This document shows positions 1-18,689 of a stretch of DNA of 64,000 bases, in pieces. The notes under the pieces were generated by a model, which was given only the letters and a program-made list of their open reading frames with translations, was not told where the DNA came from and searched no databases. This DNA is from Obrimoposthia wandeli (taxonomy: Eukaryota). Both the position numbers and the translations under genes were made by a program. How positions within the stretch are numbered: the first letter of the stretch is position 1; each line of letters begins with the position of its first letter. The stretch lies in contig CDROCS010001116.1 of assembly GCA_977020255.1 (NCBI GenBank), positions 1-64,000 on the forward strand, written 5' to 3'.

Positions 1-249
1 CTGATCCTTGATCTCTCATAATAGCCTTGGTAGTGGTGATTTGTACGATCAACGCGTTCTATGATCGTTCGATTCCTAAACTCAGGAACTTCAATGAAAC
101 AAGTCAAATTACTCATATAGTACGGTCTTTCCTCAATATGTTCATATATCGCTGGTACTCTGGTGCTGGTTCATCAGAAATGAAATTGGTCTTGGTATAA
201 TTGTGTAAGATTTTTTGTAAATTCATTTGACCTGTTCGTCTTGCGAGAT

Positions 250-715
250 CATGACGTTTCTTTTTTTGATCTCGGCTCTATCTTTGGGTAACAAAACAAA
301 ATGAGTAATATTAATATTATAAATCCAATGATCAGTGCGAGTATTGGTTATGAATTCTAAATACCGTAACGTACTGCTGGTATTCCTTTTACTCTTGATG
401 GTTAATATTTTAAATTTGTGCACTTTGGTTGGACATGTCACTGAGAAGCACTGGCTGGTTTGTCTAATGTAGTCTTCACATAACAACTAACTCCATAATG
501 TCCATTAAGTGTTATCATTTCGGTCGCTGGGACTATACACATTCGTCTGGACATCTTTTACACACATGATCATCGGCTCTACTGTGGGATGTCTTGATTA
601 TTTCTAGGGTGTTGTCGATTTCTCGTATAAATTATATTCGGATAGTGTCATCAATTCGGCTTTACTGGTTGGCATGGCTTGCAGTACCAATCCAATTACT
701 ACTCCATAGATCGAA
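250..715 (-). pseudogene. Second frameshifted type-I membrane protein (Cys-containing ectodomain)
   Basis: Signal-like ISIYGVVIGLVLQAMPTSKA|E (~655-715) and TM ILALIIGFIILILLILFCY (~287-345) in frames not shown in the ORF track. Confidence 0.45.
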
Positions 716-1159
716 ATCCTTGTGCAACGGTGCCTGCAGGGCCTTGACCGACTTGAGGTTTAATTATCAATCGTTTGAAGATATCTGTTTCTGGTGGATC
801 GTTTTGTTGTCTGTCGTTGTTTTTGTCTCTCGATTCCTCCTCGTCCGATAATCAACTGTACTGGTTTACCTTGTATCGTCAACTTTCCAGATCCATTTTT
901 GCGGACAAGCATGTTTTATGTCCTTCCATTGTTTCAATTATCACTCTTTTACTTCCATACTCACGTGTTTTGATGACATCGCCATCGAATATATACGTTG
1001 GTCCTTTTGTATCAGCATCTTTTTGTATTTCCTTTACAACTCGTTTTCTTCGCTTGCATCCAGCGAATGTTGTTGATATTAGATCAAGTGCGCTGTCGGT
1101 CAACTTCGTAATCTATTCGAAATTGATTCAGTATTCTGTTTTGTGGGTAAAATATCGCT

Positions 1160-1500
1160 TCATTTACTATGTTGTCCTCGATCCTTTCGTCTAGATACAG
1201 AAGCACTTTGTTTGTTTGGTCCATTTAGTCTTTTCATCTTTACAAACTGAAATCTTTTACTGTCGGTTCTCATAGATCGAAGACATTTTCGGATGATCCA
1301 TACATCAATTAGTCCTAACAATACTAATAACATCATCAGTGCCGGTGTATGGTACTTTATGGTGTAATTGTGGATTTCGTTGACCCAGGAACTATTTCCG
1401 TGGTTGGAGCCTATCTCCTGTGCTCCCGTTATCGGCATTAGACAACTTAACAAGCCTATTGCTAACAATCTTTGGTATTGAAAGCTTGGCACTGTTGTTG
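1160..1500 (-). CDS. Small type-I membrane protein segment
   Basis: Signal-like LLAIGLLSCLMPITGA|QE, sequons NSS and NYT, TM ALMMLLVLLGLIDVWII, basic tail. Confidence 0.55.
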
Positions 1501-1544
1501 TAGCTTCATTTGTTTCTCGTTGTTGTTTCCTCTTTTCGGTGTAT

Positions 1545-2005
1545 TTCTCTATTTCTCGAACGAGTAACGGTTTGAATTCCGTATTCGGTCGACTTCTTTG
1601 TTTGATGTAGACCATCGCTTCTTCTGGCGTGTGACCATGGTACTTACCAACAAGGATACACCTATGGCGCTAACATTGTACCTTTTTCTGATATATCAGG
1701 AACGCCGTTTCCTTCTGTGACTTCAGCTTGATGGTTTGAGTCAATTTCGTCAGATGTTGTTGCGCACGTTTATCTCTCGATTGAAGCATGTATGTGTGTA
1801 TCGAGTGGTGTCATCTTCAGTATTTTGACACAGACTAATTATCTCGTTTCCGACTTCAACAATGTTGATTACTCGGTTGATACTGTGGAACTTAATCCAG
1901 CAGTGTCTATATCTCCTGGATGACATAAAATACTTTTGGCATATTTGTGTAATTTTGTCGACTCCGGCTAAGAATAACCTCGGTCAACGATAATGCTTGG
2001 AGGAA
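1545..2005 (-). pseudogene. Second, catalytically degenerate DSP-like domain
   Basis: PSIIVDR.LFLAG...INRVINI...YHGHTPEEAMVYIKQRSRPN echoes the DUSP pattern. No HCxxGxxR motif is visible. Confidence 0.55.
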
Positions 2006-2059
2006 ATTCTTTTCCTTTGGATCCCTCAGGAATGTCGTCCATCCGTCTTTGTTCTTGCA

Positions 2060-2475
2060 ACAGAAGTTGGTAATTTGCCAACTGTCCCAAAAAATTAAGA
2101 TTTGGGTTTGCAATACTTTTTCTCCTGTAGGTATGTTTTAGCGCTTCTAGTACCTGTATCTGTCTATTCTTATTAGATATGCTAATATCAGAGTTGCTGA
2201 TCGAGAAATTCCTTTCTGGCAATGTACCAACACTTTTCCTTGGTTTCGGAGTTCTCTGTGAAGTATTTCGTTTGTTTCACGAACCATTCGAGAAGATTAG
2301 CATCCATTGAGTCTTTTACTCTTAATGTCATAGCTCTGATCGTCTGATATTGCGATTTGTGATTCATTGTAACGTTGATCACATATGTTATCCCTTGTTC
2401 CGTAACAGTTTCTTTTCATCTGTTGCATCCTCCACATTTCCGAGGTACAACTTACCTGGAATGATCTCACTCTTC
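2060..2475 (-). CDS. MKP-like dual-specificity phosphatase, catalytic motif intact, split by two frameshifts
   Basis: SEIIPGKLYLGNVEDA / QGITYVINVT / VKDSMDANLLEWF / GKVLVHCQKGISRSATLILAYL (2198-2224) / IANPNLNFLGQL. Confidence 0.92.
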
Positions 2476-2959
2476 ATTTGTGGCATTAATTCTGACTCTT
2501 CAAGTTTTAGTCTTTCTAATCTCTTCTCTATCTGTTCGTCGATGTTAGTTGTTTTGTTGTTTCTTTCCTCTCAGCATTCGTATTGCTGGAGGGGATATTC
2601 ATCTTTGTCTCTGATGTCTGTTCCTTTGTTGAGTCTTCTTCCGACTCGGTCTCCTCTGTGATTTATTCGTCTTTCTTGTATATTCTGTTTCACGAATTCT
2701 ATGTTTTGTCTTTTTCTGCTCTCTTTAGCGAATTCAACCTCCATGGTTCTTCCGAATCGCTCTATTATGTTATCTTCGGATTCTGTTGATTCTGTATCGT
2801 TACTTTCCGGTTCGCTGTCTTCATCAGACTCGCTCGGAAGGGTATTCTGGTATGTCTGTCTGAACTGAAATTAATGAAGGTGTTAGAATAATTGGATTGA
2901 TTTCCCTTCGTATTTGTGAATCGGATACGGTATTACACTATCTTCCTTTTAAGTATCTT

Positions 2960-3925
2960 CAACTTGGAACTGTGCTCCATAGCACATGACAATTGTTTCC
3001 AATTTACCCATGATGGACAATCCATCAAAAATAGGTAACATTCAGCTTAGATATCGGTGTCTTCGCATAATTAATTAAGTTTACTCGTATCTCGGTTGAT
3101 GACGGCCATCGATTTTTTAGTAAAATTATAATTTCGTCGTTTATCGATGTAATTACACTTGGCGCGGATGATACTATTTCAGCATGATATTTTGGCTGGA
3201 TTGAGTTGGTCACTTGTTCTCGGATCATATTGATTCTTTGTGGCTTTTTATTTTTAGCTTCCCACTTCCGGTATCCGCTGTCAATGCGTAACTCTGCCGT
3301 TGCTTTGATGATTTTATTGTTAGTCACTTCCGGATGGGTTGGCGAATGGAATCCTTCTATTACGCTCAACCTTACAGATACTTCCGTTTGATCTGTCTCT
3401 AACCGGTGAGATTCTGGTATACAACATACAATTGTCTTTCCATCAAAGTATTTTGTGTCCATCTGACAAATTATCTTTTCAGTGTCAGCGTCGATTAAAT
3501 GGACTCTCATGATATCTCTTTTCCCATGTGAATTACGTAATACCATTATTACATCGTGGTATTCTTGTTTGAGTTTTTTGGGGTACCATGCAGTATGTGA
3601 CCACCGGCCGGTTCTTTTTCTTCCTGACTGGCTAGTCCTGCTTCAGTACTGTCATAGTTCTGCCATGCAACTATGTTTGGTGTCAATGTGATTTCGATTA
3701 TCACTTTCTCAGTCGTAAACACATTGGAATTTTGATAAAGTGCTGCGACTAGTGTATTTCCGTCGTAGTATGACACTCTAAGTTCGCACAGAAATTCGTT
3801 TGTCAGTGCATCTTTCACAATGACTTCTTTAGCCACATCTGTGGGTTGTGTTTTTTCGAAAACGACTATTATCTCTTCGTCTTCTTCTAATATCTCTTGT
3901 GGTGCGATGTGTCGGATTACTTCCT
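2960..3925 (-). CDS. Three tandem IPT/TIG-like (Rel-dimerisation-type) repeats following integrase
   Basis: IRHIAPQEILEEDEEIIVVFEKTQPTDV...YYDGNTLV; HILHGTP...MRVHL...YFDGKTIVCCIP; EIVSSAPSVITSINDEIIILL...YF(D)GLSI. The shared Y[YF]DG motif shows internal triplication. Confidence 0.55.
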
Positions 3926-3929
3926 TTTC

Positions 3930-5200
3930 CTCCTGGTACTTCATTCTGAGCATACCAATTCTCGCTGGTTTTTTCTCGCTACCACTAGTCATCATGTTTA
4001 TGTAGTTCCGATCACTTACCATTCGTGTAAGTTTAATGGTATTGGTATTTGGCTTCGATTTCTGTGATCTTAACTCATATCGTGACGCATTGTCTTTATT
4101 TGGTACCAATTTGCATCGATTTGCATGTACAATCATCGGTTCCTTGTTCCGATTCTCTTCGTTGATTACTTTCAAATTTGTTGAGGTTGTCTGGATCACC
4201 TTGTATGGTCCTTTGTATGGTCTATGAAGTTTAAACGATAGACCTGGTTCGATGACTGGATAAAATATCATCACTTGATCTCCGACTCTAAATTCATGTG
4301 GTTTTGCTTTTTTGTCGTATTGTTCCTTGTAACCTTCTTGATTGAATTTCAACTTCAATCCGGCTTTGGTCCAAGCATCTTGTAACCTTTCCTTCATGAC
4401 GACAATGTATTGTTCAGTTTCTAGGTACTGAGATGTTGGCTCGGTCCACTCCAGATCCATTGGCATATTGTTCTGTCTGAGATACATCAGATAGAATGGT
4501 GTGTGACCTGTCGCCTCTCGAACTGAATTCCTGTAAGCATATAAACATGAAGGTAAATATTTATCCCAATCCTCTTGCTTATCTGAGCAATAGGATTGTA
4601 CCATCATACATAAAGTTTTATTAAACCTTTCCACCAGACCATCTGTCTGTGGGTGGTATGGTGAAGTTTGTAACTTCATGATTCCGAATATCTTCGATAC
4701 TGCTTTTATGACTTCTCCAGTGAAGTTCTTACCTTGATCCGTTAACAACTTTCTAGGTACTCCGTATCGAAATATTATCTCTTCCACTAAGATTTGCGCT
4801 ATTGTTTCAGCTTTCTGGTTCTGCATGGGGTATGCTTCTACCCATCTCGTCATGTAGTCCGTAAATACTATGACATACTTGTTTCCTTTACTTGATTCTC
4901 TCAATGGTCCCAAGCTATCCATCGCTGTGAATTCCATTGGTGCCAAGGGAACTGGCATTGGTTTCAACGGAACTTTAGTACGAGTTCCGGTGTCTTTTCT
5001 GGTTAAACATACTTTACATTGTTTACACCATTGTTTTATGTCGTCTTCCATACCATCCCAATGGTACTTCTCTTTGATTCTGGCTATTGTCTTTCGCCCT
5101 GACAGATGTCCTCCTAGTGTTCCGTCGTGATACTGATCATCACTGCTGTTTTCAATGACTTCGGAATTACTACTACTATCTTTCCGACATTATTGACAAT
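3930..5200 (-). CDS. pol: Integrase (HHCC, DDE core, GPY/F module)
   Basis: CKQC, AMDSLGPL, LTDQGKNF, YHPQTDGLVERFN, YKGPYKV. Confidence 0.96.
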
Positions 5201-5217
5201 ATACAAGATTCCTTCTT

Positions 5218-7044
5218 TTATCGAGTATTTTTCGCCATCTCATCGTTTAGATCTCCTTTCACCAACAAGTCTTTGATTAGACTCAGCTCTTCATCTTCTT
5301 TCTGTTCTTTGATGATCTCTTTGTCTATTTTACCCGTCTTTAGCAAAATCGTCAGTAGATTTGCTTCTCCTTTTTGGTCATTGGTTTCATCTTCTTCTGG
5401 AATTATGTTTCCTTTCTCGTCTACATTTGTCAATCTCGATAAACAATCTGCGTTGCCATTCGACTTTCCGGTTCTATAACGGATTTCTAGATCGAATTCG
5501 GCCAATTTTAGAAACCATCTGTTTAATCTACTCATCTCATCTCTATGTTTATATAAGAACTGTAGTGGTTTGTGATCTGTATACAGGAATACTTTTTGTC
5601 CTAGCAAATAGTGTCTGTATTGTCTACATGAATACACTATGGCTAGACATTCCTTTTCGATAACAGAGTATCCTCTTTCAGCTCTGTTTAATCCTCTACT
5701 CGCATACGCGATGACGTGTTCTCTTCCTTCGTCATCCTCTTGTCCCAATACTGCTCCTACAGCATAGTTACTTGCATCTGTCATAAGTATGAATTGTCGG
5801 TTTATATCTGGAAACGCTAATATTGGTGCTTTTATCAGTCTTTCTTTTAAATGCTCGAACGCTTGTTGGGCTTCTTTTCCCCATATGAACTTTTCATCTT
5901 TCCTTGTCAACTTTCTCAATGGTGTTGCTATATCTGAAAAATGTTCAACAAATCGTCTATAATAATTCGCAAGACCTAAAAAACTCTGTATTTTCTTAAC
6001 AGTCTTTGGCGCTAAATGCGCTTTGACTTTCTCGATCTTCGCTGGATCAGGTCGAATGCTTTCTTTCGATACTATATGTCCTAAAAATGTTACTCCTCTT
6101 TAGCCCATTCGCATTTTGTAGGTTTAACTTTTAATTTAGCGTTTTCCAGTCTTTTAAATACAACTTCAAGATTTTTTAAATGTTCTTCGAACGTTTTAGA
6201 AAATATTATTATGTCATCGATATAAACCATCGTGTTTGCACACGATGCGAGTACAAAATTCATGCAACGCTGAAATGTTGCTGGAGCTCCTGTCAGTCCG
6301 AATGGCATCTTTTCGCATTCGTACAATCCATCTCCGCAGGAAAAGGATGTTTTGTGTTTATCCTCTTCCTCTATCTCGATTTGCCAGTATCCACTCTGCA
6401 AATCTAATGTCGTAAAATAATCTGAATTACCCAATTTATCGAGCATCTCTTCGATTCTAGGTAATGGATACACATCTTTTCTTGTGATCTTGTTCAGTTC
6501 TCTGAAATCTATACAGAATCTCATTTTCCCATCCTTCTTTTTTTTGCACCAACACCACTGGTGCTGAGAATGGCGAAAAACTTGGTCTAATTACTCCTGT
6601 TTTAGACATATCTTCGATCTGACTTTTTACTTCATCTTGTAATTGTAATGGTACTCGATATGGTCTTCTTCTGACTACTTTGTCTTCTGTCAGTGGTATT
6701 GTATGTTTTATGACAGGTGTTTCTCCTATGTCATATGGATTTTTTGCAATTACTTTCGGAAATTTATGTATTAGATCAAGTAATTGTTTCTTTTCTCTAG
6801 TTGTCAGTCTTTCTGATTGAATTACTATTTCTTCGTAATCATTCGTATCTTTATCGAGTTTCATAGCACACGGTGGGATTCTCCATCTGTGTATCTTTCC
6901 CAACCTCATTCCTCTGTATAATAGAATGTCATTGTTGGTTGTATTCATCAGTCTAACTGGTATTTTATGGTTTTCGATCAGGCATACTGTACTCACAACT
7001 GGTAATTCGTATTTCTCTATGAAATCTCGTGATGGTTCGAACAC
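5218..7044 (-). CDS. pol: Reverse transcriptase and RNase H (frameshifted)
   Basis: RFCIDFRELN, YPLPRIEE, LDLQSGYWQ, MPFGL, YIDD; RNase H TDASNYAVGAVL, EKECLA, TDHKPL. Confidence 0.97.
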
Positions 7045-7099: not shown

Positions 7100-7560
7100 T
7101 TACCGATTTTTAGGATTCTCTATGATTACATCAATTTGGTTTATTTGTCTGTTTGATGTGCTATCCTTCAATCTTGGATCTTGTAAATCAATACTTATCC
7201 CTTGCTGTTGTGATAGTACATCCATTCCTAAAATTGTAGGTTCAGGACATTCTTTCATGATTCTAACTGGTATAGTGATCGTATTACGTCCAATTATAAA
7301 TGTACATGGTAATATTCTCGTCACTTTTACAGGGTCTCCATTGACCGATACCAAGAATTCATCTGGTTCTGCCATTGTTCGTTTCTGTTCCTCTGTCAAA
7401 CAGTCTTCACTTACTATCGAAGCTACAGCACCTGTATCAATTAAAGCTTTTACTCTTAAATTATTTACTCTAATGATAGCTGCTGGTCGCTGTGCTCCAT
7501 TTATGTTTCCCATGTGGTATATTGTATTTATCGAATTATTACACTCTGTCAGTCCACCTT
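7100..7560 (-). CDS. pol: Aspartic protease domain 2
   Basis: KALIDTGAVASIV...ILGMDVL. Confidence 0.92.
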
Positions 7561-7985: not shown

Positions 7986-7989
7986 TTGC

Positions 7990-8200
7990 TTTATTTTGTT
8001 TTTAAAAATACAAAATTCTGCAAAATTCATGATGTAAAATTTTCTTAGGTAGCTCAAGAGTATATCTGTCGATAATTCGTTCTTTTACACTTGTGGCATT
8101 TAATTACGTCTTTACCATCCTTATAGCAAAAAGTCCCTTTTTTGCCAATTTTTAAGTCTTGGATCTTCGAAAGTTACTTCTCGATATTGTTCGTCACATT
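7990..8200 (-). pseudogene. Degenerate or frameshifted BIR domain 2
   Basis: Across frames: REVTF...KLAKKG.FCYKDGKDVIKCHKC...HHEFC. The His-Cys spacing is not canonical. Confidence 0.55.
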
Positions 8201-8329
8201 CGTTCACTTCTCGCATAACTTCGTATATATCTTCAATTCGACTATTCATTATTACTCTTCCTGTTTTTAGAGCTGCTTCTCTTTTTAGGATCCGTCACTG
8301 TAATCGAAATCGGTGCTTTTCCCGGTTGG

Positions 8330-9236: not shown

Positions 9237-11340
9237 TTAAGATGCCTCTCTTGAACTTTTCCTTCTCTCCTCCTTTCGTTCCTTCATTGCATATCGCCTT
9301 AACGCCACTTCCTCTTTGTCTGGTAACGGAATCTTTGGTTTTCCTGGTATCTTTGCATATACTCCTGGACTATCATTATCGTCGTCGTTATCGTCTCGAT
9401 AGTTTCTTGGTTCTCTCATCATGGTTCTCGTTTGGTGTTGTTCCTTCTTGAGGGCTCGCAACTCGTTCTCGTGATGATGATGGTGCATTAGATATTTTGC
9501 TAAAAATGGAAAACATCCAATTATAAGTTGCCAGGTGATTCCGGTTATCCTGTATAAACTATACGTAGACAACACCTGGGCTATAATTACCTGCACAAAT
9601 TTAATTATAACATAAATACCTATGATACCCGAAAATAATTGTCCTAAAACAAGGAATTTCCCCCACATCTTTCTAAGTGTCTGATGTGCTGCTTCCTTGA
9701 AATGACTTGGCGATAATAACATATCGAAATTCGCATATCTCGCTCCTGGCGGTAATGCTCGATGTACCATCTCCGTAAGTACTCTGGCTCTTCTTACTGG
9801 AAACATTATTTCGTTCCACGCCGCTTTTAAATCTTTTTCATTGTACAATCCTGCGTTCTCCATATTTTCCACCGCTTGGAATTTCATTTTACCTTTAAGA
9901 TTAGTCATTCTTATCATCGCTGGGGTTTTCGTTGGCTTTCGATCAGGTAACGTTATCCATAGATTATTCGTCATCTGATATTCAGGTGCCATTATATTAG
10001 AGCAGCTGATTTCTTTAGTTGGAGTGTCTTTTGGAAGCAACATTCTCGTGATTGGTTCAACAAAAAGATCTTTTAAATTATACGTTACTGCCAATTCGCT
10101 CGTACATCGATCTGTTTTTCTCAACTGTACCTCTACTTTATTACACTTGTAAGTATACTATACTTCTCCCATGGTTTTAGCAAATACTCCTTCATCCAAG
10201 GGTAATAATGGTGCTACCATGTCTGGATTCGTAATAGCTAATGCTAACTTTGTTCTTACGATCTCTTTGTTTAGCTGGCAATCTCTTTCTATCATCATCC
10301 GATATAACTGTTCCATTTGCATCAATCCTTTATGATAATAGAAATCAATTTTATTATTAAAATACGTGTGTAGCTGCATATCTTTTGGTTTTAGCTTGGT
10401 TTCTGCCAATGCTATTGCTTCTTTAGACAAAACTATTCCTGGATAGTTTGTAGTACTAACAGTCATTCCGCATCGCGCTTTGTTTCTCTTTTTAATAAAT
10501 ATCAATCCTTCTTCTATTGATGTTGCCATTAACAGTGTAGGTGTCTTTGTCATTGGAATTGGTCTTGTTTCATTGAGCAATCCTTTTCCTACTTTATTAT
10601 ACAGGAATCCTTTCTCCATCTTTATTATACAGGAATCCTTTTATTTTATTAAAGCTAATCTCTTTCAAAAATACTAAAGAGCATTGCTTCGGATTTATGT
10701 TATACATAATTTTGGCTTCCCCTGTAAAACAGGATGCATCTGTCATTTTACATTCTGGATACTTCATCATTAGTTGTGTCTTTTTATCAAAATTGGCGGT
10801 CCATGTTTTTAATTCGATCTTGTAAGTTACATCCATTACTAACTCAGATACTTTGGTTCCACGCACGTTTTTGTTTCTCCGTCACAAGATCCATCGGCCC
10901 ATCGTTGTCCGACTCTCGTGACTGTTTCGTATCGTCTCACTCCAATTTTACTTCAGGTTTGTAATTTTGTCTACCTCTATTGTTCCCGTTCGAAATGCAT
11001 CTTCGCAATCTCTCGGCAAACCTTATGTGCCTTGTACGGTGTGGTAGGTGTGATTTCTGACATAAAAACTTCTATGACCACAATAGAATTCGTGATAACT
11101 TGAATGGATTGAACATTCTTTCACTTCTACTTGTACTTTATCAACATCCTGATACACAAAGTAGTTTTCAACACCTTGAACTTCTAGTTTTGACGGTTGT
11201 GATTCTGGACAGTCTTCGCTGTCAAGCAGTGAATACTTTTGTCCCATCTTTGGTATGCTACAGTCATATGCTATCAATCCTGATGCCTGTTGCATTCCCA
11301 TAAACATTACTAACATCATCATCATCATTGTTGTGGACAT
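9237..11340 (-). CDS. env: Envelope: chuvirus (Jingchuvirales)-type glycoprotein, ~700 aa, in 4-5 frameshifted pieces
   Basis: Signal peptide then LIAYDC, FYCG, TNYPGI, TYFNNK, DCQL, GEV..YKC, AGLY..D, IMFP and a C-terminal TM region. The order and spacing match chuviral G motifs as I recall them. Confidence 0.85.
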
Positions 11341-11399
11341 ATTTGGTTGATTGTTTCTCTCTTTCGGACGGTATTGTTTATTTTCCTTTGACGATTCTC

Positions 11400-11857
11400 A
11401 TGACATTGTTCGTCATCGTCTTCATTCATTTCCACAATGGTTTTAGCGTAGTCACTTAATTTTGCCCAACCTCCATTTTCGTCGATTCGTCTCTGTAATA
11501 CATTCTCGATCAAAATACATTGCTTCATTTATTCCTTGTTTGACTTCGTGAGGTTGGCTCGTTCGTTCCGTCAATTGGAAACATAGATATGTGATTGCTG
11601 TAATTAACTTTTATTTGTAGTTTGGTTTCCACATAATCTCGCTAAAACTTCACCGTCATAAAATCTATCTATCGATGCATGGTATACATGATTCGCGGTC
11701 ATTCTCTTTACTGCAGACATCTGTGATCTGACTGCTTTAGTCAAATTGTCTCGTTATATCGGTTGTTTCATCTCTGTACATTTTAAACAACTTCGGCTTC
11801 ACTTGCCTGAGAATTCCCGTAAGTATATCTTTACTACTTGGAGTTTCCGAATTCATA
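11400..11857 (-). pseudogene. Possible Bcl-2-fold domain split by frameshifts
   Basis: Reconstructed EVKQGINEAMYLIENVLQRRIDENGGWAKLSDY resembles the BH2 region (WIQENGGW). A hydrophobic helix KLITAITYLCFQL lies upstream. Confidence 0.4.
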
Positions 11858-12112
11858 TCACCTCTGATATCTTCTATTCCTTTCTGCACTATACTGCTCC
11901 AATGACGCTGCTAACTGTCCAATGCTTAGATGTCTCTCTTCATCAGTTTGTGGTGCAGTTAGAACGTTTCGTAATATACTTTCGCCTTTTCTAGGTCTTC
12001 CAGGTCCTCTTCGAAAATACTGATACTCAGTTTGATTCTCTCCCTGGATCATACGGTTCATCATTATACTGTATCTCTTGACTTGGTCCTTCTTCATGGC
12101 CAATCTCTTCAC
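11858..12112 (-). CDS. AT-hook-containing fragment, probably a frameshifted continuation of the Ubl ORF
   Basis: RRGPGRPRKG motif. Confidence 0.6.
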   Translation of the reverse strand: MKRLAMKKDQVKRYSIMMNRMIQGENQTEYQYFRRGPGRPRKGESILRNVLTAPQTDEERHLSIGQLAASLEQYSAERNRRYQR

Positions 12113-12178
12113 TTTGTCTCATCATCTGCTCTGCTTGTCTATCTTTGTATGCAGCATGCCAAATTGGTGAATCTAAAT

Positions 12179-12742
12179 CTACAATTTCGAGACTTCGTCT
12201 TCTCCTACTAGTTGGGTTACGGTTTCGTTTTGTCTCACTTGGTTAGCTGTATCCGTGACTTCATCTTGTCTGATTGGAATTATATCTGCTGGTGGCACCT
12301 CGACCACTGGAGTTGTCAACTCATTTTCTAAATTCATGTCTTGTAATTCAGTTACGTACGGTTCTGGTGTGGATGTCTTGTTCCAAGCTTCAGCTACATC
12401 ATTATCTCCGCTTTCGCTTGAACTGTCTAAAATTTCTATAGGCGTTTTTATCATTTCTAACGCAGAATTCAATATCTCGGTTAATCCTTCATTATCTACT
12501 AACTCTTGACGTCCTACAGTGATGACATCAATTTTTTCCTCTAATTCATTTCCTATCGGATATCCAAACTCGACTGGTACGTCCTCATCATCTAGTGATC
12601 TCCCTTTATAATGGAACAACATATTCATTCCATCAATTTCAAGTTTCTCAGCCAACTTTTTCCGAATCGTTTTCATTGTTTGATACACGTTAAGTTTTTC
12701 ATGTATTATCTGTCCGGAAATTAATCGAAGTGAAATTTTCAT
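12179..12742 (-). CDS. Ubiquitin/SUMO-like domain protein with acidic tail; ATG overlaps the gag stop (ATGA)
   Basis: MKISLRLISGQIIHEKLNVYQTMKTIRKKLAEK...LFHYKGRSLDDEDVP...KIDVI aligns by eye with ubiquitin and SUMO beta-grasp patterns. Confidence 0.7.
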   Translation of the reverse strand: MKISLRLISGQIIHEKLNVYQTMKTIRKKLAEKLEIDGMNMLFHYKGRSLDDEDVPVEFGYPIGNELEEKIDVITVGRQELVDNEGLTEILNSALEMIKTPIEILDSSSESGDNDVAEAWNKTSTPEPYVTELQDMNLENELTTPVVEVPPADIIPIRQDEVTDTANQVRQNETVTQLVGEDEVSKL

Positions 12743-14991
12743 CGTTCCTTTTGGTTTGATCTCTGTACATAACGACCATAACCTTTCAGTAGTCCTCGGG
12801 GTACTTCTTTGTAACCCAAGTTATCATGACTATGTTTAACCAATTCTGCACGCACTTCTTCCAATCGGTGCACTTTAATTGTTTGCAATTTGGCCAGAAC
12901 TTCTGGAGCTTCACTCGTTTCATCTAACGGTTGATTTAACGTCTCCTTAGCTTCACTAATTATCTTTTTTACATTTTCCATACTCGTAGCATTTCTCGCT
13001 GCTTCCACATGATCAGTCATAGGTTGTGCGTTACACGTTTTCTCTATTGGTGTCTCATACGCTTCTAATATTCTATTCATTAAATCATTCATCTCTTCTC
13101 TCGAATGTAGACTTTTCTCTTGTTTCGACAACGTAGATGAATTCGCCATCTTTGTATGTGGTGAATCTTTAATTATTCCCAACATTCGTTCAAATTTACT
13201 ATCACTATCTTCAAAATCTATTTCGCGTCGAAGCTCGGTCTCGCGATTCCTATCACTGTCATCGCTTACATAACTAAAATTTCCTTTCGGTTTCGGCGAA
13301 CTCTCACGACTATTTGTCTTGTCAACATTATTATTATTATATCTACCGGAATTATTATATCTCTCAGCTCCTTGCTGTCCTACGTAATTATTGTATCTCT
13401 CAGCTCTATGCTGTCTGTATGCATAGTTATTATATCTACCTGGTGACTGTTGTCTATCTGTATACTGATTATTCAGTCTCCATGGTTGGGGAGTATATCC
13501 ACCACCTCTATTCCATGGCGGAGGTGAATTATATCCTCTATAATTATTTCCAAAATTATTATTACCGAAATTATTATTTCCAAATCTGTTAGTTCCGAAC
13601 TCTTTACTTCTCGTACAATCTCTCGAATAATGACCCATTTGTTTACACGTGTAACACATTATTCTCCCTCGAATATCTATCTTATTTTGTTCATCTTCGA
13701 ACTGTACTCGACGACTATTCTGTCTATTATCATAGCGTCCTCTAAAATCATTTCTTCGGAAATTCGATTCAAAACCGCTTCCTCGATTATTGAATCTTCC
13801 GTCACTATTTCCTGCATTATTTCCAAATCGAGAGTCACTTCGCTCTCCTCTGTTGGCGTTATAATTCCTATCGTCTCCTCTCAAGGTTGGCGATTTCGAA
13901 TTATCTCTATTAAATCTATTCCTGGAATCATCTCTATTTCTATTCCACGAATCATTATTATTTCTACCTCTTGAATCATCTCGATTCCTGTTCCAAGACT
14001 CACTATTATTTCTACCTCTCGAATCATCTCGATTCCTACTTCGGAAATTATCTCTATTTCCGTTACTGGATTCATCTACTTTTTCGAACTTATTTTGTCC
14101 ATAACTTCGATTCTGAAAATTACTCGGTTCTGTTTTATTCACGAAGACCTTTGTCTTATCGTCGTCACCTGCAGTCATTGCGTAGATTGCCAATGCTGCG
14201 TTATTCTTTATATTTTTCTCAATCTCTCTCGCCTTTCGCACGGCGTTATCAAAATCATTTGTATCCGATACTGCTAATAACACTTTAATATCCTTTTTCA
14301 ATCCTCCTCTAAATATATCTAACAAAACCTCTGCCATTTCATTTTGGTTCCGGTCATTTTCCGCTGCTTGTGCTTCTTGAGGTACAGGAATACCGTCCTG
14401 ATTTCTCATTATTCTTCTTGGGTACGCTCTTGCGGCCAAGGTTCTCAAAACATACGCGTATTCATTCACGCCTTCATCATGTTTCTGTTTCCGTTCTCTC
14501 ATGAGTCGCTTATTTACTTTGGCTAAGTCTCCTAATACCAATTTTCCAATAAAAGCATTTTCCAACGTTGGCCAATCTAAACGTTCTGCTTCTGTCAAAT
14601 GTTTATACACTTCAAGTGCTAATCCGGTTAAATGTGCCTGTACTCTAACACATTTTTCTTTATCGTTCCATCCTTGAACATCTGCACAACTCGAATATTC
14701 TGCGAGGAAGTCACAAATACTTTCCTCATCTCCTTTAAACTTTGTAATCTGCAATGATCCTGAAAAGTTGGGTCTCAACGTCGCATTTAAAGCTTGTGCC
14801 AACTGCTCGGCATTCATTTCACCTACATTATTTCCTGCATTAATATCTGCTTGAGCTCCTGGTTGAGCCATATTTTCAACTATAACTTCTTCAACTATTT
14901 CTTCAATATTATTCAATGGAACTTCCTCAATCACTACTGGATTGGCAATTTCAAATTCTTCTTGGTCTATGTCACCAAATAATTCAGTCAA
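12739..14991 (-). CDS. gag: Gag polyprotein (capsid region, N/R/G-rich repeats, single CCHC zinc knuckle)
   Basis: Retrotransposon capsid-like KFKGDEE...GWNDKEK...HLTGLA. Zinc knuckle CYTCKQMGHYSRDC. The frame is open upstream to ~15243 and the first in-frame ATG is at 14871. Confidence 0.93.
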   Translation of the reverse strand: MTELFGDIDQEEFEIANPVVIEEVPLNNIEEIVEEVIVENMAQPGAQADINAGNNVGEMNAEQLAQALNATLRPNFSGSLQITKFKGDEESICDFLAEYSSCADVQGWNDKEKCVRVQAHLTGLALEVYKHLTEAERLDWPTLENAFIGKLVLGDLAKVNKRLMRERKQKHDEGVNEYAYVLRTLAARAYPRRIMRNQDGIPVPQEAQAAENDRNQNEMAEVLLDIFRGGLKKDIKVLLAVSDTNDFDNAVRKAREIEKNIKNNAALAIYAMTAGDDDKTKVFVNKTEPSNFQNRSYGQNKFEKVDESSNGNRDNFRSRNRDDSRGRNNSESWNRNRDDSRGRNNNDSWNRNRDDSRNRFNRDNSKSPTLRGDDRNYNANRGERSDSRFGNNAGNSDGRFNNRGSGFESNFRRNDFRGRYDNRQNSRRVQFEDEQNKIDIRGRIMCYTCKQMGHYSRDCTRSKEFGTNRFGNNNFGNNNFGNNYRGYNSPPPWNRGGGYTPQPWRLNNQYTDRQQSPGRYNNYAYRQHRAERYNNYVGQQGAERYNNSGRYNNNNVDKTNSRESSPKPKGNFSYVSDDSDRNRETELRREIDFEDSDSKFERMLGIIKDSPHTKMANSSTLSKQEKSLHSREEMNDLMNRILEAYETPIEKTCNAQPMTDHVEAARNATSMENVKKIISEAKETLNQPLDETSEAPEVLAKLQTIKVHRLEEVRAELVKHSHDNLGYKEVPRGLLKGYGRYVQRSNQKER

Positions 14992-15483
14992 ATTAAAACT
15001 GCCGGTTGAAACCGCTGATTGATCAACGCCTCTTTCTGATACGTTTTCTTCGACTCTAGTCTTTTCTGTTACTTTGTTATCTGTTTGGGGAACCTGTTCA
15101 ATTCGGTTAACTTTATTATTATTTATCTCTTCCTTGGGAATCTGACTTTGTCTTCTAGTATTATACGCGGGTCCTTTTCTATTATCCGTTGTCTTATCAA
15201 TTATGTATTCGTTTACGATATCAATATACTTATTATTTTTATCTTATTTCACAATTCTTATTTTACGATTTTTTATCTCTTTAATTAGTTCGAGGACAGA
15301 GTCTCCCGACTTAACCTATTCAATTAATTACTTCGAGTATCAATCCACTCGATTCTCACTTTATCAATTTATTTACGATTTTATCTTTTTAATTAGTTCG
15401 AGGACAGAGTCTCCCGACTTAACTTATTCAATTAATTACTTCGAGTATCAATCCACTCGATTCTCACTTATAAAATTTACTGA

Positions 15484-16263
15484 CTCGAGGAACAAATCCA
15501 CTCGACTTCTCAAAACTTATCAAATTCTTACTTCGAGGAACGAATCTACCCGATTTCTCAACACTTATCAAATTCTTAACTTCGAGGAACAAATCTACCC
15601 GATTTCTCAACACTTATCAAATTCTTAACTTCGAGGAACAAATCTACCTGATTTCTCAACACTTATCAAATTCTTAACTTCGAGGAACAAATCTACCCGA
15701 TTTCTCAACACTTATCAAATTCTTAACTTCGAGGAACAAATCTACTCGATTTCTCAACACTTATCAAATTCTTAACTTCGAGGAACAAATCTACCCGATT
15801 TCTCAACACTTATCAAATTCTTAACTTCGAGGAACAAATCTACCCGATTTCTCAACACTTATCAAATTCTTAACTTCGAGGAACAAATCTACCCGATTTC
15901 TCAACACTTATCAAATTCTTAACTTCGAGGAACAAATCTACCCGATTTCTCAACACTTATCAAATTCTTAACTTCGAGGAACAAATCTACTCGATTTCTC
16001 AACACTTATCAAATTCTTAACTTCGAGGAACAAATCTACCCGATTTCTCAACACTTATCAAATTCTTAACTTCGAGGAACAAATCTACCCGATTTCTCAA
16101 CACTTATCAAATTCTTAACTTCGAGGAACAAATCTACCCGATTTCTCAACACTTATCAAATTCTTAACTTCGAGGAACAAATCTACCCGATTTCTCAACA
16201 CTTATCAAATTCTTAACTTCGAGGAACAAATCTACTCGATTTCTCAACACTTATCAAATTCTT
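15484..16263. repeat. 49-bp tandem array (16 copies) in the 5' leader
   Basis: Unit TTCGAGGAACAAATCTACCCGATTTCTCAACACTTATCAAATTCTTAAC, starting at 15532, 15581, 15630 ... 16218. It is preceded by two related 108-bp units at 15289 and 15397. Confidence 0.97.
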
Positions 16264-16289
16264 ATCTCAATTTACTTATATCTTCTTCT

Positions 16290-16560
16290 GAAACTTATTC
16301 TCAATTGTCTATATTCTTCTGCTGAAACTTATTCTCAATATTTCTGAAACTTATTCTCAATATATGAAACTTATTCTTAATATCTGAAACTTATTCTTAA
16401 TATCTGAAACTTATTCTCAATATCTGAAACTTATTCTTAATATCTGTACTTATTCTATTTACCTGAAACTTATTCTCAATTATCTGCAACTTATCTGAAC
16501 TTATTCTATTCACCTGAAACTTATTCTCAATTTTCCAAAACTTATCTGAACTTATTCTAC
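16290..16560. repeat. ~20-bp degenerate tandem repeat just downstream of the PBS
   Basis: (TATCTGAAACTTATTCTYAA)n. Confidence 0.85.
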
Positions 16561-16585
16561 GTGAATTCGCTGTGTCCGACGAGCT

Positions 16586-16604
16586 ATCCTCACTCGGGGC
16601 ACCA
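16586..16604 (-). promoter_or_regulatory. Primer-binding site complementary to the 3' end of elongator tRNA-Met
   Basis: Sense TGGTGCCCCGAGTGAGGAT. The plus strand ATCCTCACTCGGGGCACCA matches the animal elongator tRNA-Met 3' end including CCA. It sits 8 nt from the LTR end. Confidence 0.9.
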
Positions 16605-17097
16605 CTTTAATATGTTGGGGTTTCTATACGAAACTTGGTATAGAGCCTCTTGACTGTGCGGAGGTCCCCAACGTGAGTTCGATTAGAAGCAGGTCTTAAA
16701 GTTGGTCGTGGCCTACTTAGTGTTATGGTTGCCTAATCTCTTGTACTATCTGAAGGTATTTGATTTGATGTCTCTTAGTCTGAAGGGTGTAAAAACAACT
16801 TGTTCTAATGTAGGAAATTGTTTATTCAAAATTCACGTAACTAACACCACAATACGTTTATGTACGTATTTCTAAAAAGTATGATAAAATTCCTAAAGGA
16901 CTTCTGTGAGTCTCTACAAGAAGTGGGGATGAACCACGTATCGATTTTACGTTCAGGTGATTAAGTTTCTTAGTTTTAGTCTTCTTACTCAGGTTGGTTA
17001 ATCTATAACGCAACTCTCTTAAATTTCTTCGCTCCTACTTCTTATCTCTAGCTACAATTTCTTGGTTCCTTACTCTCTCTGTGTGTGTTTGACCCGA

Positions 17098-17526
17098 ATT
17101 GTCTATTGTAGACAAGGGATCTCCTAAAAACCTAATTGTCAAGATGACAATGAAAACTTACTCCTAATTGTCAACTATGGACAATGAACGAACCGAATTG
17201 TCAGCTAGTGGACAATGAGTCTTACCGAATTGTCTACTAGGGACAATGAATATTTATCCGAATTTCCAACTAGGGGAAATGAATGAACCTAATTGTCAGC
17301 TAGGGACAATGAATCTTACGGGAAAAACGTCTGGTAGGTTTCCTAATTGTCGCTGGGGACAATGAATAAATGTCCGATCCTAATTACCAACTAGGGGCAA
17401 TGATTGTGTTAACGAGACAGTGATCCTAATTGCCAGCTAGGGGCAATGAATTTGTGTATTATTAAGAAAATGTAGAATTACCAACTAGGGGTAATGAATA
17501 TATCCTAATTGCCTACTAGGGGCAAT
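17098..17526 (-). repeat. Array of 12 short hairpins with covarying stems inside the LTR
   Basis: Units are ATTGTC-N5-8-GACAAT, with variants ATTTCC/GGAAAT, ATTGCC/GGCAAT and ATTACC/GGTAAT. Most loops contain CTAG. Spacers vary in length. Confidence 0.9.
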
Positions 17527-17649
17527 GAATGAACCTAGTCGGTGGTCTTACCAGTTACTCGAGATTCCTAAACGCGGTGGGATGTCCGATGCTGTTTCCG
17601 ATATCGTCTTCTCGCTCAGCCTTAGTCTTTTGGATACTGTCGGATCGAG

Positions 17650-18070
17650 TCTTTTGGGATACTCAGATATACTTTGGATATTCAGATATACTTTGGATAT
17701 TCAGATACACTTTGGATATTCAGATACACTTTGGATATTCAGATACACTTTGGATATTCAGATACACTTTGGATATTCAGATACACTTTGGATATTCAGA
17801 TACACTTTGGATATTCAGATACACTTTGGATATTCAGATACACTTTGGATATTCTTTCAAATATACTTTGGTTACTGTCTTTCAAATATAATTTGGTTAC
17901 TGTCTTTCAAATATACTTTGGTTACTGTCTTTCAAATATACTTTGGATACTGTCTTTCGAATATACTTTGGTTACTGTCTTTCAAATATACTTTGGTTAC
18001 TGTCTTTCGAATATACTTTGGTTACTGTCTTTCAAATATACTTTGGTTACTGTCTTTCAAATATACTTTT
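17650..18070. repeat. 19-bp tandem repeat grading into a 25-bp tandem repeat within the LTR
   Basis: (TTTGGATATTCAGATACAC)n followed by (TTCAAATATACTTTGGTTACTGTCT)n. Confidence 0.95.
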
Positions 18071-18152
18071 CTTTTCGGCTATACTTTTCCGCTCAACCTG
18101 CAGTCAGGGAGTTGATTCTGAATTTGTGTTTTCTGTCTTCAAAACCTCTGCC

Positions 18153-18158
18153 TTTATA
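18153..18158 (-). promoter_or_regulatory. Candidate LTR TATA box (sense TATAAAGG); predicted start site near 18122
   Basis: TATAAA ~450 nt inside the LTR 5' end, with an Inr-like TTCAGAAT ~30 nt downstream. A sense AATAAA at 16821-16826 would give a long R region. Confidence 0.45.
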
Positions 18159-18689
18159 CGAAACTTCCTGTCAGTCAACGACAGCTGAAATGAAATTAAA
18201 AGTTATTCGACTGCACAAAATGTGCTTACCTTTTCCTTGATTGACGGTTTGATTGCTGGAGAATATTCTTCCTGTCAGTCAACGGCAGCTGAAAAAACTC
18301 AAATTGATTTTACTGCACGAAATGTGCTTACCTTTTTTTTCTTGATTGACGGTTTTAATTAACCGTTTTTCTTTTAATTAATTCTTATTTTTTGTCGTCC
18401 TTGTTAATTAACTTTAAACTTTTATATATTTTCGCATAATACACGACCTTCGTGGTCCTCCTAATTTTACCCTAAATTTCACTAATTTTACTTTTAAAAC
18501 TTAATTTAATATTTTAATTTAATTTTCGACCTTGCTTTCAAGGATTTTTATTTTAGTATTTAATCGACTAAAATATTTAATTTTCTTAATTCTCAACCTT
18601 AACACCTTTATTGAAAGACAAAGTTATAATTTTTAAACGCAAATCTTTGGTTTGTATACCTAGCCAGTTAAGAAAATATCTGTCCTCAG

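What the first reader, a model, noticed from the sequence alone, without database searches (positions are those of the whole stretch)
1..18604. Giant enveloped gypsy element carrying a toolkit of host-signalling and cell-death modulators
One LTR element over 18.6 kb combines gag-pol with a chuvirus-type fusogen, a full IAP, an MKP-like phosphatase plus a degenerate second copy, and triple Rel-type IPT repeats. It also has a SUMO/Ub-like protein, an AT-hook, a possible Bcl-2 fold and small membrane proteins. The domains are seen in sequence. IAPs block caspases, MKPs shut down JNK/p38/ERK, and Rel IPT domains mediate NF-kB dimerisation (established). The inference is an infectious retrovirus-like agent with the counter-defence repertoire usually seen in large DNA viruses. 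The nearest precedent I know is the giant Burro gypsy elements of the planarian Schmidtea mediterranea. I cannot tell from here whether their cargo matches, so novelty is unverified.
Basis: partly seen in the sequence, partly recalled or inferred. Interest (0 to 1): 0.95.

Follow-up and report, generated by a model that had tools for sequence, protein, structure and literature searches.

The report
Decayed Burro-like giant gypsy retroelement copy
This is a broken, window-truncated copy of a giant envelope-bearing gypsy retroelement of the kind already described as "Burro" in planarians. It carries cell-death and ubiquitin-type domains, plus a phosphatase module and a triple repeat after the integrase that may be new details.

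Summary
Bases 1 to about 18,600 hold one retroelement on the minus strand, cut off by the window edge.

Confirmed by profile search:
- gag with a CCHC zinc knuckle
- a Monjiviricetes/chuvirus-type fusion glycoprotein lying between gag and pol
- two aspartic proteases flanking an IAP-like BIR + RING module
- RT, RNase H and integrase
- a dual-specificity phosphatase catalytic domain downstream of the integrase

Not supported:
- "Rel-type IPT": a triple ~90-aa repeat exists, but it gives no IPT signal and only a weak UHM/RRM-like hit
- "MKP-like": no rhodanese domain was found
- the second phosphatase copy
- the Bcl-2 fold
- the Ub-like domain, which is only weakly supported

The copy is dead. 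env, RT, the IAP module and the phosphatase are all interrupted by stops and frameshifts. Only one non-coding end is present, so no LTR pair can be shown.

The architecture (gag, Ub/SUMO-like, BCL2-like, env, PR, pol, plus BIR and RING) and the idea that it meddles with apoptosis and ubiquitination were published for Burro/GYPSM1 (PMC6431247).

The phosphatase and the post-integrase repeats are not mentioned there, and they are absent from the nearest relatives I found. They could be lineage-specific cargo. Other copies could not be examined.

The parts
14992..18604 (-). 5' terminal non-coding region (putative 5' LTR plus leader) with seven tandem arrays. The outer boundary lies somewhere between about 18.36 and 18.6 kb and is unverified.
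   Evidence: Tandem Repeats Finder found arrays of 49 nt x15.9, 19 nt x10.4, 25 nt x9.6, 20 nt x8.6, and 108, 95 and 102 nt x~1.9. There is no minus-strand ORF of 80 aa or more. GC is 0.34 and A/T 1.30. No second copy lies in the window.
12739..14991 (-). gag: an uninterrupted 750-codon ORF with one CCHC zinc knuckle and low-complexity N/R/D-rich stretches
   Evidence: the ORF listing. Pfam zf-CCHC scores E 7.4e-06. No homologues of similar length were found.
12179..12742 (-). 187-aa ORF with a weakly ubiquitin-like N-terminus
   Evidence: Pfam ubiquitin scores E 0.013, below the cut-off. PDB ubiquitin, ISG15 and SUMO chains match at E 0.015-0.9. The single-sequence model has pLDDT 46 and is unusable. 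The position matches the Ubi2/SUMO-like domain published for Burro.
11858..12112 (-). 84-aa ORF with one AT-hook-like core (PGRPRK)
   Evidence: It is the only match to the core pattern in all six frames of the window. There was no Pfam hit.
11325..11889 (-). It consists of short ORF pieces only.
   Evidence: No Pfam hit at E 1 and no Bcl-2 chain in the PDB search. Only a BH2-like NGGW is seen. The position corresponds to the BCL2-like motif reported in Burro-2, -3 and -4.
9237..11340 (-). env: a Monjiviricetes (chuvirus/mononegavirus)-type fusion glycoprotein, broken by at least 4 in-frame stops and 1-2 frameshifts
   Evidence: PF24664 was found in three pieces covering profile positions 4-93, 245-377 and 390-632 of 653. 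A hydrophobic anchor lies in the C-terminal piece. The counts come from guide proteins P0002 and P0010.
8759..9100 (-). First aspartic protease domain (DTG present)
   Evidence: Pfam gag-asp_proteas scores E 2.7e-06 and Asp_protease_2 E 1.4e-05. Relatives P0001 and P0002 also have two proteases in tandem.
7539..8586 (-). IAP-like module: one BIR and one C-terminal IAP-type RING, broken by at least 1 frameshift and at least 1 stop between them
   Evidence: BIR scores E 1.6e-10 and zf-C3HC4_3 E 7.8e-13. PDB hits are NAIP/DIAP1/cIAP BIRs and cIAP1/XIAP RINGs. No second BIR was detected.
7100..7513 (-). Second aspartic protease domain (DTG present)
   Evidence: Pfam gag-asp_proteas scores E 9.6e-10 and RVP E 3.6e-07.
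6090..7044 (-). Reverse transcriptase (YIDD present), broken by at least 2 frameshifts. One guide also shows in-frame stops.
   Evidence: RVT_1 scores E 8.9e-34.
5218..5919 (-). RNase H domain, uninterrupted within the domain
   Evidence: RT_RNaseH scores E 1.1e-39 and RT_RNaseH_2 E 8.8e-38. One frame change lies between it and the integrase.
3549..5051 (-). Integrase ORF (500 aa). The catalytic core is intact. The N-terminal zinc-binding domain is not recovered in this ORF. The C-terminal 150 aa are the first post-integrase repeat.
   Evidence: rve scores E 7.2e-12. Relatives match only query residues 1 to about 350. Integrase_H2C2 is present in the relatives but not in this ORF.
3028..3974 (-). 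Three tandem copies of a ~90-aa unit of unknown fold. It is interrupted by at least one frame change and ends at a stop.
   Evidence: BLASTP between the two halves gives E 1e-05 and 5e-04, and the alignment is A1. There were no Pfam hits, no sequence matches to solved (PDB) structures and no homologues. The A1 profile matches the PUF60/FIR UHM domain at E 0.0054. The unit is not found in relatives.
1968..2415 (-). Dual-specificity phosphatase catalytic domain with its P-loop intact, broken by at least 2 frameshifts
   Evidence: DSPc pieces score E 1.7e-04 (profile 14-75), 1.2e-13 (61-101) and 0.14 (98-131). The best PDB hits are DUSP26, 13, 14 and 10.
1160..1615 (-). 151-aa ORF with one strong and one weaker hydrophobic segment. 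Function unknown.
   Evidence: the ORF listing and the hydropathy scan. Only sub-threshold Pfam noise was found.
1..1159 (-). Unassigned 3'-ward part of the element, cut by the window edge
   Evidence: It has the same composition as the rest of the element, GC 0.38 and A/T 1.63. No Pfam hits were found in its ORFs. It has no similarity to the 5' non-coding region, so the 3' LTR is not in the window.

Best explanation
The region is one old, inactivated copy of a Burro-like giant Ty3/gypsy retroelement with the unusual gene order gag - accessory block - env - pol - accessory block. It lies on the minus strand and is truncated by the window edge.

The inferred working form of the family is a very long polyprotein, or a few long ORFs. 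The retroviral core (gag, two proteases, RT, RNase H, integrase) would be interleaved with a class III-type fusion glycoprotein taken from a negative-strand RNA virus lineage, and with host-derived regulatory modules.

Those modules are:
- a Ub-like domain and an AT-hook upstream of env
- an IAP-like BIR + RING E3 unit set between the two proteases, so it would presumably be released by proteolytic processing
- after the integrase, three ~90-aa repeats, an atypical dual-specificity phosphatase and a small membrane protein

By analogy with characterised IAPs and DUSPs, such modules would damp caspase activation and stress-kinase signalling in the cell that expresses the element.

What is shown: the domain content, order, strand, composition and the breaks. 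What is inferred: the polyprotein mode, the processing and the host-modulating role. This particular copy encodes none of these functions any longer.
For: - Domain identities and order come, and IAP-type BIR and RING.
- Every module from base 1 to 14991 has uniform composition and coding-strand A-richness, unlike the flanks.
- The first post-integrase repeat is in the same ORF as the integrase core.
- The nearest relatives in the 1.84-billion-protein library are P0001, P0002 and P0010, at 49-60% identity in the integrase. They show env - PR - PR - RT - RH - IN within single long ORFs, so the double protease and the env-before-pol order are family traits.
- Published Burro/GYPSM1 has gag(CCHC) - Ubi2/SUMO-like - BCL2-like - env - PR - RT - RH - IN, plus BIR and RING motifs. 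It is discussed as a provirus that tinkers with apoptosis and ubiquitination (PMC6431247).
- GAG-ENV-POL gypsy elements are reported in Platyhelminthes (PMC13524379).
- The flanks are about 71% A+T, as described for planarian genomes (PMC11410931).
- The breaks are documented.
Against: - No LTR pair, primer-binding site or target-site duplication could be shown.
- The host species is not identified.
- No other copy of the same family could be examined, so it is unproven that the phosphatase, the repeats and the IAP module are family-level cargo.
- The nearest relatives at 49-60% integrase identity lack BIR, RING and DSPc in the ORFs available.
- MATH, Smc, ankyrin and dUTPase-like motifs reported for Burro-1 were not found here, so it is not Burro-1 itself.
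- Whether some frame changes between modules are native rather than damage cannot be told from one copy.
Confidence: 0.8

Rival explanations
1. One reading: the locus is a currently infectious retrovirus-like agent with a working counter-defence repertoire.
For: All the catalytic or zinc-binding motifs that can be read are intact in their pieces. These are the DTG of both proteases, YIDD in RT, the BIR zinc-binding CX2CX16HX6C spacing, the RING, and HCxxGxxRS in the phosphatase. BURRO1 is reported as abundant, transcribed and under piRNA control in planarians (PMC8532177).
Against: env has at least 4 in-frame stops and 1-2 frameshifts. RT has at least 2 frameshifts. The IAP-like module has at least 1 frameshift and 1 stop. 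The phosphatase has at least 2 frameshifts. The integrase zinc-binding domain is not recovered.
Confidence: 0.02
2. The cargo, in particular the phosphatase and the downstream membrane ORF, is not part of the element. It would be host-derived or foreign DNA that landed in or next to this one copy, as a nested insertion or a processed pseudogene.
For: The nearest relatives lack DSPc, BIR and RING, and their post-integrase tails do not match window 1-3990. No homologue of the post-integrase ORF exists in the 5.8-billion-protein collection. The 3' end of the element is not in the window, so the phosphatase cannot be shown to lie inside it.
Against: The cargo is on the same strand as the element. 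Its GC (0.38-0.41) and coding-strand A/T ratio (1.6-2.2) match the core genes, whereas the host exon and flanks have A/T 0.93-1.09. No repeat boundary or inverted or direct repeat brackets the cargo. The IAP module sits between two protease domains. The repeats begin inside the integrase ORF. BIR and RING are documented in the Burro consensus.
Confidence: 0.12
3. The block is a composite of two different retroelements, one nested in or recombined with the other. That would explain the two proteases and env lying upstream of pol.
For: There are two protease domains, and env lies between gag and pol, which is atypical for gypsy elements.
Against: Relatives P0001 and P0002 carry both proteases in one uninterrupted ORF, and P0002 and P0010 carry env - PR - RT - RH - IN in one uninterrupted ORF. 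There is only one RT, one RNase H, one integrase and one gag. No internal LTR-like repeats are present. The gag-env-pol order is published for flatworm elements.
Confidence: 0.04

Closest known systems
[quoted passage not shown] 2018; Arkhipova & Yushenova 2019, PMC6431247)
   Same: - Ty3/gypsy pol order and gag with a CCHC knuckle.
- env of mononegavirus type placed between gag and pol.
- A Ub/SUMO-like region and a (here unconfirmed) BCL2-like position upstream of env.
- BIR and RING motifs.
- Tandem repeats in the terminal regions.
- An AT-rich host genome and multi-kilobase excess over ordinary gypsy elements.
   Different: - MATH_TRAF_C, Smc, ankyrin and dUTPase-like motifs were not found here.
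- A DSPc phosphatase, a triple post-integrase repeat and a tandem second protease are not mentioned in the published description that I could read.
- Sequence identity to the named families was not tested. No reference sequence was available to me, and Grohme et al. 2018 is not in the library.
GAG-ENV-POL Ty3/gypsy 'errantiviruses' with gB/class III-type env in Platyhelminthes, Nematoda and Bryozoa (eLife 2026, PMC13524379)
   Same: The gene order is gag-env-pol. The env is related to class III fusogens of the Monjiviricetes/chuvirus type.
   Different: Those elements are described as ordinary-sized gag/env/pol elements. No IAP, phosphatase or Ub-like cargo is reported in the passages I read.
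Unnamed environmental relatives P0001, P0002, P0006 and P0010 (ENA metagenome contigs, and a contig binned as a Flavobacteriaceae MAG)
   Same: They share 49-60% identity in the integrase. The order env - PR - PR - RT - RH - IN occurs in one ORF. Extra modules follow the integrase: a third protease in P0003, P0005 and P0006, and ankyrin repeats in P0006.
   Different: They have no BIR, RING or DSPc. Their post-integrase tails are unrelated to the window's.
Mosquito BEL/Pao and gypsy elements that captured a Chuviridae-like glycoprotein (Dezordi et al. 2020, PMC7642597)
   Same: An LTR retroelement carries an env captured from the Jingchuvirales/Monjiviricetes lineage.
   Different: They belong to a different retroelement superfamily and a different host phylum. 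env lies downstream of pol, and no host-signalling cargo is present.
IAP and dual-specificity phosphatase genes of large DNA viruses (baculovirus IAPs, poxvirus VH1-type phosphatases). This comparison rests on my own knowledge and was not tested here.
   Same: A mobile or viral genome carries a BIR + RING protein and a small DUSP.
   Different: Those are separate genes of DNA viruses. Here the domains are embedded in a retroelement coding string, and in this copy they are broken.

Membership tests
Ty3/gypsy (Metaviridae) LTR retroelement | pol domain order PR - RT - RNase H - IN, with gypsy-type RT-linked RNase H | tested here: met
   The Pfam order on the minus strand is Asp protease, RVT_1, RT_RNaseH/RT_RNaseH_2, rve.
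Ty3/gypsy (Metaviridae) LTR retroelement | Two long terminal repeats, a primer-binding site and a target-site duplication | tested here: inconclusive
   Only the 5' non-coding end is in the window. No second copy was found, and no tRNA genes are available to test a primer site.
Burro-like giant planarian gypsy elements | env of negative-strand RNA virus type located between gag and pol | tested here: met
   PF24664 pieces at 9237-11340 lie between gag (12739-14991) and the proteases. The published feature is described.
Burro-like giant planarian gypsy elements | Apoptosis and ubiquitin-related motifs in the coding string (BIR, RING, Ubi2/SUMO-like, BCL2-like) | tested here: inconclusive
   BIR and RING are met. 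Ub-like is weak. BCL2-like is not detected.
Burro-like giant planarian gypsy elements | Burro-1 specific motifs: MATH_TRAF_C, Smc, ankyrin, and dUTPase-like between PR and RT | tested here: not met
   No such Pfam hits were found in any ORF scanned. The PR-RT linker gave no dUTPase chain. It is therefore not Burro-1 itself.
Burro-like giant planarian gypsy elements | Total length above 30 kb, with an internal region up to 25 kb | tested here: inconclusive
   At least 18.4-18.6 kb is present, with at least 15 kb internal. The element runs off the window at base 1.
Burro-like giant planarian gypsy elements | Sequence identity to the named consensus families, and a Dugesiidae host | not testable with these tools
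   No reference sequence was available. Exact-ORF look-ups of three flanking ORFs outside the element (a host exon, a transposase-like ORF and an unassigned ORF) found nothing on record. Only the AT-rich composition agrees.
IAP (inhibitor of apoptosis) proteins | At least one BIR with CX2CX16HX6C zinc ligands, and for the RING-bearing subgroup a C-terminal C3HC4 RING | tested here: met
   Spacing was read in the ORF at 8242-8586. BIR scores E 1.6e-10 and zf-C3HC4_3 E 7.8e-13. cIAP1 and XIAP RINGs are the best solved relatives.
IAP (inhibitor of apoptosis) proteins | One continuous reading frame joining BIR and RING | tested here: not met
   BIR and RING lie in different frames with a stop between them. 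The count is at least 1 frameshift and 1 stop.
MAP kinase phosphatases (the MKP subgroup of DUSPs) | DSPc catalytic domain with the HCxxGxxRS loop | tested here: met
   DSPc scores E 1.2e-13, and the pieces cover profile positions 14-131.
MAP kinase phosphatases (the MKP subgroup of DUSPs) | N-terminal rhodanese/CH2 domain with a kinase-interaction motif | tested here: not met
   No rhodanese hit was found in the ORFs upstream of the catalytic domain. The best solved relatives include atypical DUSP26, 13 and 14 at E-values as good as those of the MKP DUSP10.
Rel homology / IPT (TIG) domains | A match to the TIG or RHD_dimer profiles, or an Ig-like fold | tested here: not met
   No Pfam family was found at E up to 10 for the repeat ORFs and no PDB hit. 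The repeat profile hits the PUF60/FIR UHM domain at E 0.0054 instead. The model's pLDDT of 41 is too low for a fold search.
Bcl-2 family | BH1-BH2 (and BH3/BH4) motifs, or a Bcl-2 profile match | tested here: not met
   No Pfam hit at E 1 in five pieces. No Bcl-2 chain was found in the PDB search of the piece with NGGW. The region is in short pieces, so the test is weak.

The most novel reading that the evidence does not exclude
This lineage of Burro-like elements may carry a post-integrase accessory block that has not been described. The block would consist of three UHM/RRM-like repeats, an atypical dual-specificity phosphatase and a small membrane protein, in addition to an IAP-like unit wedged between two proteases. 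As far as the library searches show, that would be the first retroelement-borne DUSP. It would also show that giant flatworm retroelements swap host-signalling modules between lineages.
Probability: 0.3. Interest if true: 0.5.

Novelty: new member of a known kind. Interest (0 to 1): 0.3.

Why it matters
Giant env-bearing gypsy elements that carry apoptosis and ubiquitin modules are rare. They show a retroelement accumulating host-regulatory genes the way large DNA viruses do.

That principle is already published for Burro. This locus adds at most a further family member with a different cargo set: IAP between two proteases, a DUSP, and a repeat module of unknown fold.

If the phosphatase and the repeats prove to be family-level cargo, cargo in these elements would be shown to be modular and lineage-specific. 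It would also give a concrete set of domains to follow in planarian expression and piRNA data. As a single decayed copy, the locus is ordinary genomic fossil material.

Tried and rejected
- **Homologue searches.** All three homologous-protein searches returned nothing: the post-integrase 173-aa ORF, gag, and the env C-terminal piece. The gag search was probably swamped by low-complexity words.
- **Structure prediction.** Single-sequence predictions of the post-integrase ORF and of the Ub-like N-terminus gave pLDDT 41 and 46. No fold search was justified.
- **Long hits from the representatives search.** P0008, P0018, P0024, P0027, P0032 and P0067 turned out to be chimeric multi-element gene models, so they say nothing about cargo.
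- **Origin of the relatives.** Cluster look-ups gave no organism names. All are environmental contigs.
- **Host identification.** Exact-ORF look-ups of three flanking ORFs outside the element (a host exon, a transposase-like ORF and an unassigned ORF) found nothing on record.
- **Second phosphatase copy.** Self-comparison of open-frame pieces in bases 1-3000 found nothing.
- **dUTPase-like domain between PR and RT.** No support.
- **Solved structural relative of env by sequence.** None found.
- **Bacterial-type promoter and terminator scan of the 5' region.** Not meaningful for a eukaryotic element.
- **Rejected idea: two nested elements.** See the rival explanations.
- **Rejected idea: the repeats are IPT.** No signal of any kind.

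Full report
**1. What is there.**
The window has no N. Bases 1 to about 18.4-18.6 kb form a block that differs sharply from the rest of the window. Its GC is 0.34-0.41, against 0.26-0.30 elsewhere. It also has a strong strand asymmetry: the A/T ratio on the minus strand is 1.3-2.2, against 0.93-1.09 in the flanks. All long ORFs with database support lie on the minus strand. A U6 snRNA gene at 36629-36734 shows that this is eukaryotic nuclear DNA.

**2. Domain map, 5' to 3' on the minus strand.**
- A 3.6-kb non-coding terminal region is packed with tandem arrays.
- gag is an uninterrupted 750-codon ORF with one CCHC knuckle.
- A 187-aa ORF has a weakly ubiquitin-like N-terminus. Pfam ubiquitin scores E 0.013, and ubiquitin, ISG15 and SUMO chains match at E 0.015-0.9.
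- An 84-aa ORF holds the only AT-hook-like core in the six-frame translation of the whole window.
- env is a Monjiviricetes_fusion glycoprotein (PF24664; pieces at E 3.8e-12, 1.7e-17 and 7.5e-43) with a hydrophobic anchor.
- Protease 1.
- An IAP-like unit.
  - The BIR scores E 1.6e-10, and its zinc-ligand spacing CX2CX16HX6C can be read directly in the ORF. Its best solved relatives are NAIP, DIAP1 and cIAP BIRs.
  - The C3HC4 RING scores E 7.8e-13. Its best solved relatives are the cIAP1 and XIAP RINGs.
- Protease 2.
- RT (E 8.9e-34, YIDD present).
- RNase H (E 1.1e-39).
- Integrase core (E 7.2e-12).
- Three tandem ~90-aa repeats.
- A basic linker.
- A DSPc phosphatase domain.
- A 151-aa ORF with a strong hydrophobic segment.
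- About 1.1 kb of unassigned sequence up to the window edge.

**3. State of the copy.**
I give counts only, obtained with guide proteins P0002 and P0010 and from the way Pfam profile positions are distributed over ORF pieces.
- gag: no break inside its ORF.
- env: at least 4 in-frame stops and 1-2 frameshifts.
- Between protease 1 and the inter-protease segment: 1 frame change.
- IAP-like unit: at least 1 frameshift and at least 1 stop between BIR and RING.
- RT: at least 2 frameshifts, and one guide also shows in-frame stops.
- Between RNase H and integrase: 1 frame change. The integrase zinc-binding domain present in all relatives is not recovered here.
- Post-integrase repeats: at least 1 frame change.
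- DSPc: at least 2 frameshifts. Its three pieces cover profile positions 14-75, 61-101 and 98-131 in three frames.

Some changes of frame between modules could be native to the family, and one copy cannot decide that. The stops and shifts inside env, RT and DSPc are damage. This copy is a fossil.

**4. Claims that did not hold.**
- **'Rel-type IPT'.**
  - The triple repeat is real. BLASTP between the halves gives E 1e-05 and 5e-04, and the alignment is A1.
  - Pfam gives nothing even at E 10, and the PDB sequence search gives nothing.
  - The 5.8-billion-protein collection holds no homologue, and the single-sequence model is unusable at pLDDT 41.
  - A profile of the three units finds the UHM (RRM-like) domain of PUF60/FIR. 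Both the first-strand segment and the strand-helix-strand segment align in order, at E 0.0054. That is a lead, not a result.
  - HMMER printed a profile consensus line by itself.
- **'MKP-like'.** The catalytic domain is a generic DUSP. Atypical DUSP26, 13 and 14 score as well as the MKP DUSP10, and no rhodanese domain was found.
- **'Degenerate second copy'.** Not found.
- **'Possible Bcl-2 fold'.** There was no Pfam or PDB signal. Only an NGGW tetrapeptide is present, at the position where BCL2-like motifs are published for Burro-2, -3 and -4.
- **'LTR element over 18.6 kb'.** The length is a minimum. No LTR pair, primer-binding site or target-site duplication can be shown, and the outer boundary at 18604 is plausible but unverified.

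**5. Is the cargo part of the element?**
The evidence within the window says yes.
- Every module from base 1 to 14991 is on the same strand and has the same GC and the same A-rich coding strand. The nearby host exon and the flanks do not.
- The IAP-like unit sits between two protease domains.
- The first post-integrase repeat lies in the same ORF as the integrase core.
- No repeats bracket any module.

Evidence from other copies could not be obtained. No fragment of the family lies elsewhere in the window. The protein collections do not contain this family.

**6. Relatives.**
A full HMMER scan of 1.84 billion representatives with the integrase ORF found seven proteins at 57-60% identity and three at 49%. 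All come from environmental assemblies, one of them mis-binned as a bacterial MAG.
- P0002 and P0010 carry env - PR(-PR) - RT - RH - IN in a single ORF.
- P0001 and P0002 have the tandem proteases.
- P0003, P0005 and P0006 have a further protease after the integrase.
- P0006 also has ankyrin repeats.
- None has BIR, RING or DSPc. Their post-integrase tails do not match window 1-3990 or the repeat profile.

The gag-env-pol order and the double protease are therefore family traits, while the accessory modules vary between lineages.

**7. Comparison with what is known.**
- Arkhipova and Yushenova 2019 (PMC6431247) summarise Jurka 2007 and Grohme et al. 2018. Burro/GYPSM1 of Schmidtea mediterranea is a gypsy-like element of more than 30 kb.
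  - Its giant ORF holds gag with CCHC knuckles, MATH_TRAF_C, a Ubi2/SUMO-like domain and a BCL2-like motif.
  - It also holds an env with hits to mononegavirus fusion glycoproteins lying in frame between gag and pol, then PR, a dUTPase-like domain, RT, RH and IN.
  - BIR, RING-type (AIR1), Smc and ankyrin motifs are present as well.
- The authors already propose that these are integrated proviruses 'meddling' with apoptosis and ubiquitination.
- GAG-ENV-POL gypsy elements with class III-type env are also reported for Platyhelminthes (PMC13524379).
- BURRO1 is expressed and is controlled by PIWI (PMC8532177).
- The flanks here are about 71% A+T, as stated for planarian genomes (PMC11410931). 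The host is not proven.

The window's element shares the core architecture but lacks the Burro-1 specific MATH, Smc, ankyrin and dUTPase-like motifs. It has a DSPc and a post-integrase repeat module that the passages I could read do not mention. Library searches for a phosphatase in LTR retroelements found nothing. Grohme et al. 2018 itself is not held, so Burro-2, -3 or -4 may already include these modules.

**8. Verdict.**
The kind of element is known. I file this as a new member of a known kind, a Burro-like element. The open point is whether the phosphatase and repeat block is family-level cargo.

Noticed in passing
window 36629-36734 (-): A full-length U6 spliceosomal snRNA gene (Rfam RF00026, 85.9 bits, E 1.7e-20). 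It confirms a eukaryotic nuclear origin.
   Followed up: no
window 24960-25593 and 58482-59098 (+): A ~640-bp direct repeat at 82% identity, with the two copies 33.5 kb apart. It could be two copies of a dispersed repeat, or the old terminal repeats of another very large element spanning 25-59 kb. Not resolved.
   Followed up: partly
window 45978-46340 (+): A second, independent BIR fragment (Pfam BIR E 1.1e-05). It lies outside the element, on the other strand, and close to the DNA-element fragments listed below. It may be a host IAP exon or cargo of another mobile element.
   Followed up: partly
window 47388-47909, 51032-51394, 52008-52706, 52883-53173 (+): Two diverged copies of an ORF fragment (direct repeat D7, 73%). 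From memory they resemble a Polinton/Maverick-type packaging ATPase, but Pfam gave no hit. They are followed by an rve integrase fragment (E 1.7e-06) and a chromodomain-like tail, and an exact 83-bp duplication lies at 52590/52690. Probably remnants of a DNA element.
   Followed up: partly
window 22142-22648 (+): An ORF whose start matches the C-terminal end of the NIF/CTD-phosphatase domain (Pfam NIF E 4e-04), with GC 0.48. It is probably the last exon of a host gene on the strand opposite to the element. If so, the element may lie upstream of, or in an intron of, that gene.
   Followed up: no
window 31876-32283 (-): A 135-aa ORF that, from memory, looks like the N-terminus of an ISXO2/IS1595-like transposase-derived protein. 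Pfam gave no hit.
   Followed up: no
proteins P0003, P0005, P0006 (relatives, not in the window): The closest relatives carry an additional aspartic protease domain downstream of the integrase, and P0006 has ankyrin repeats after it. This is an unusual layout that suggests modular accessory blocks after pol in this clade.
   Followed up: partly
protein P0010 (relative, not in the window): A 2627-aa env-pol polyprotein of this clade is deposited as a hypothetical protein of a Flavobacteriaceae MAG (HBK71150.1). It is almost certainly a eukaryotic contig mis-binned into a bacterial genome.
   Followed up: no
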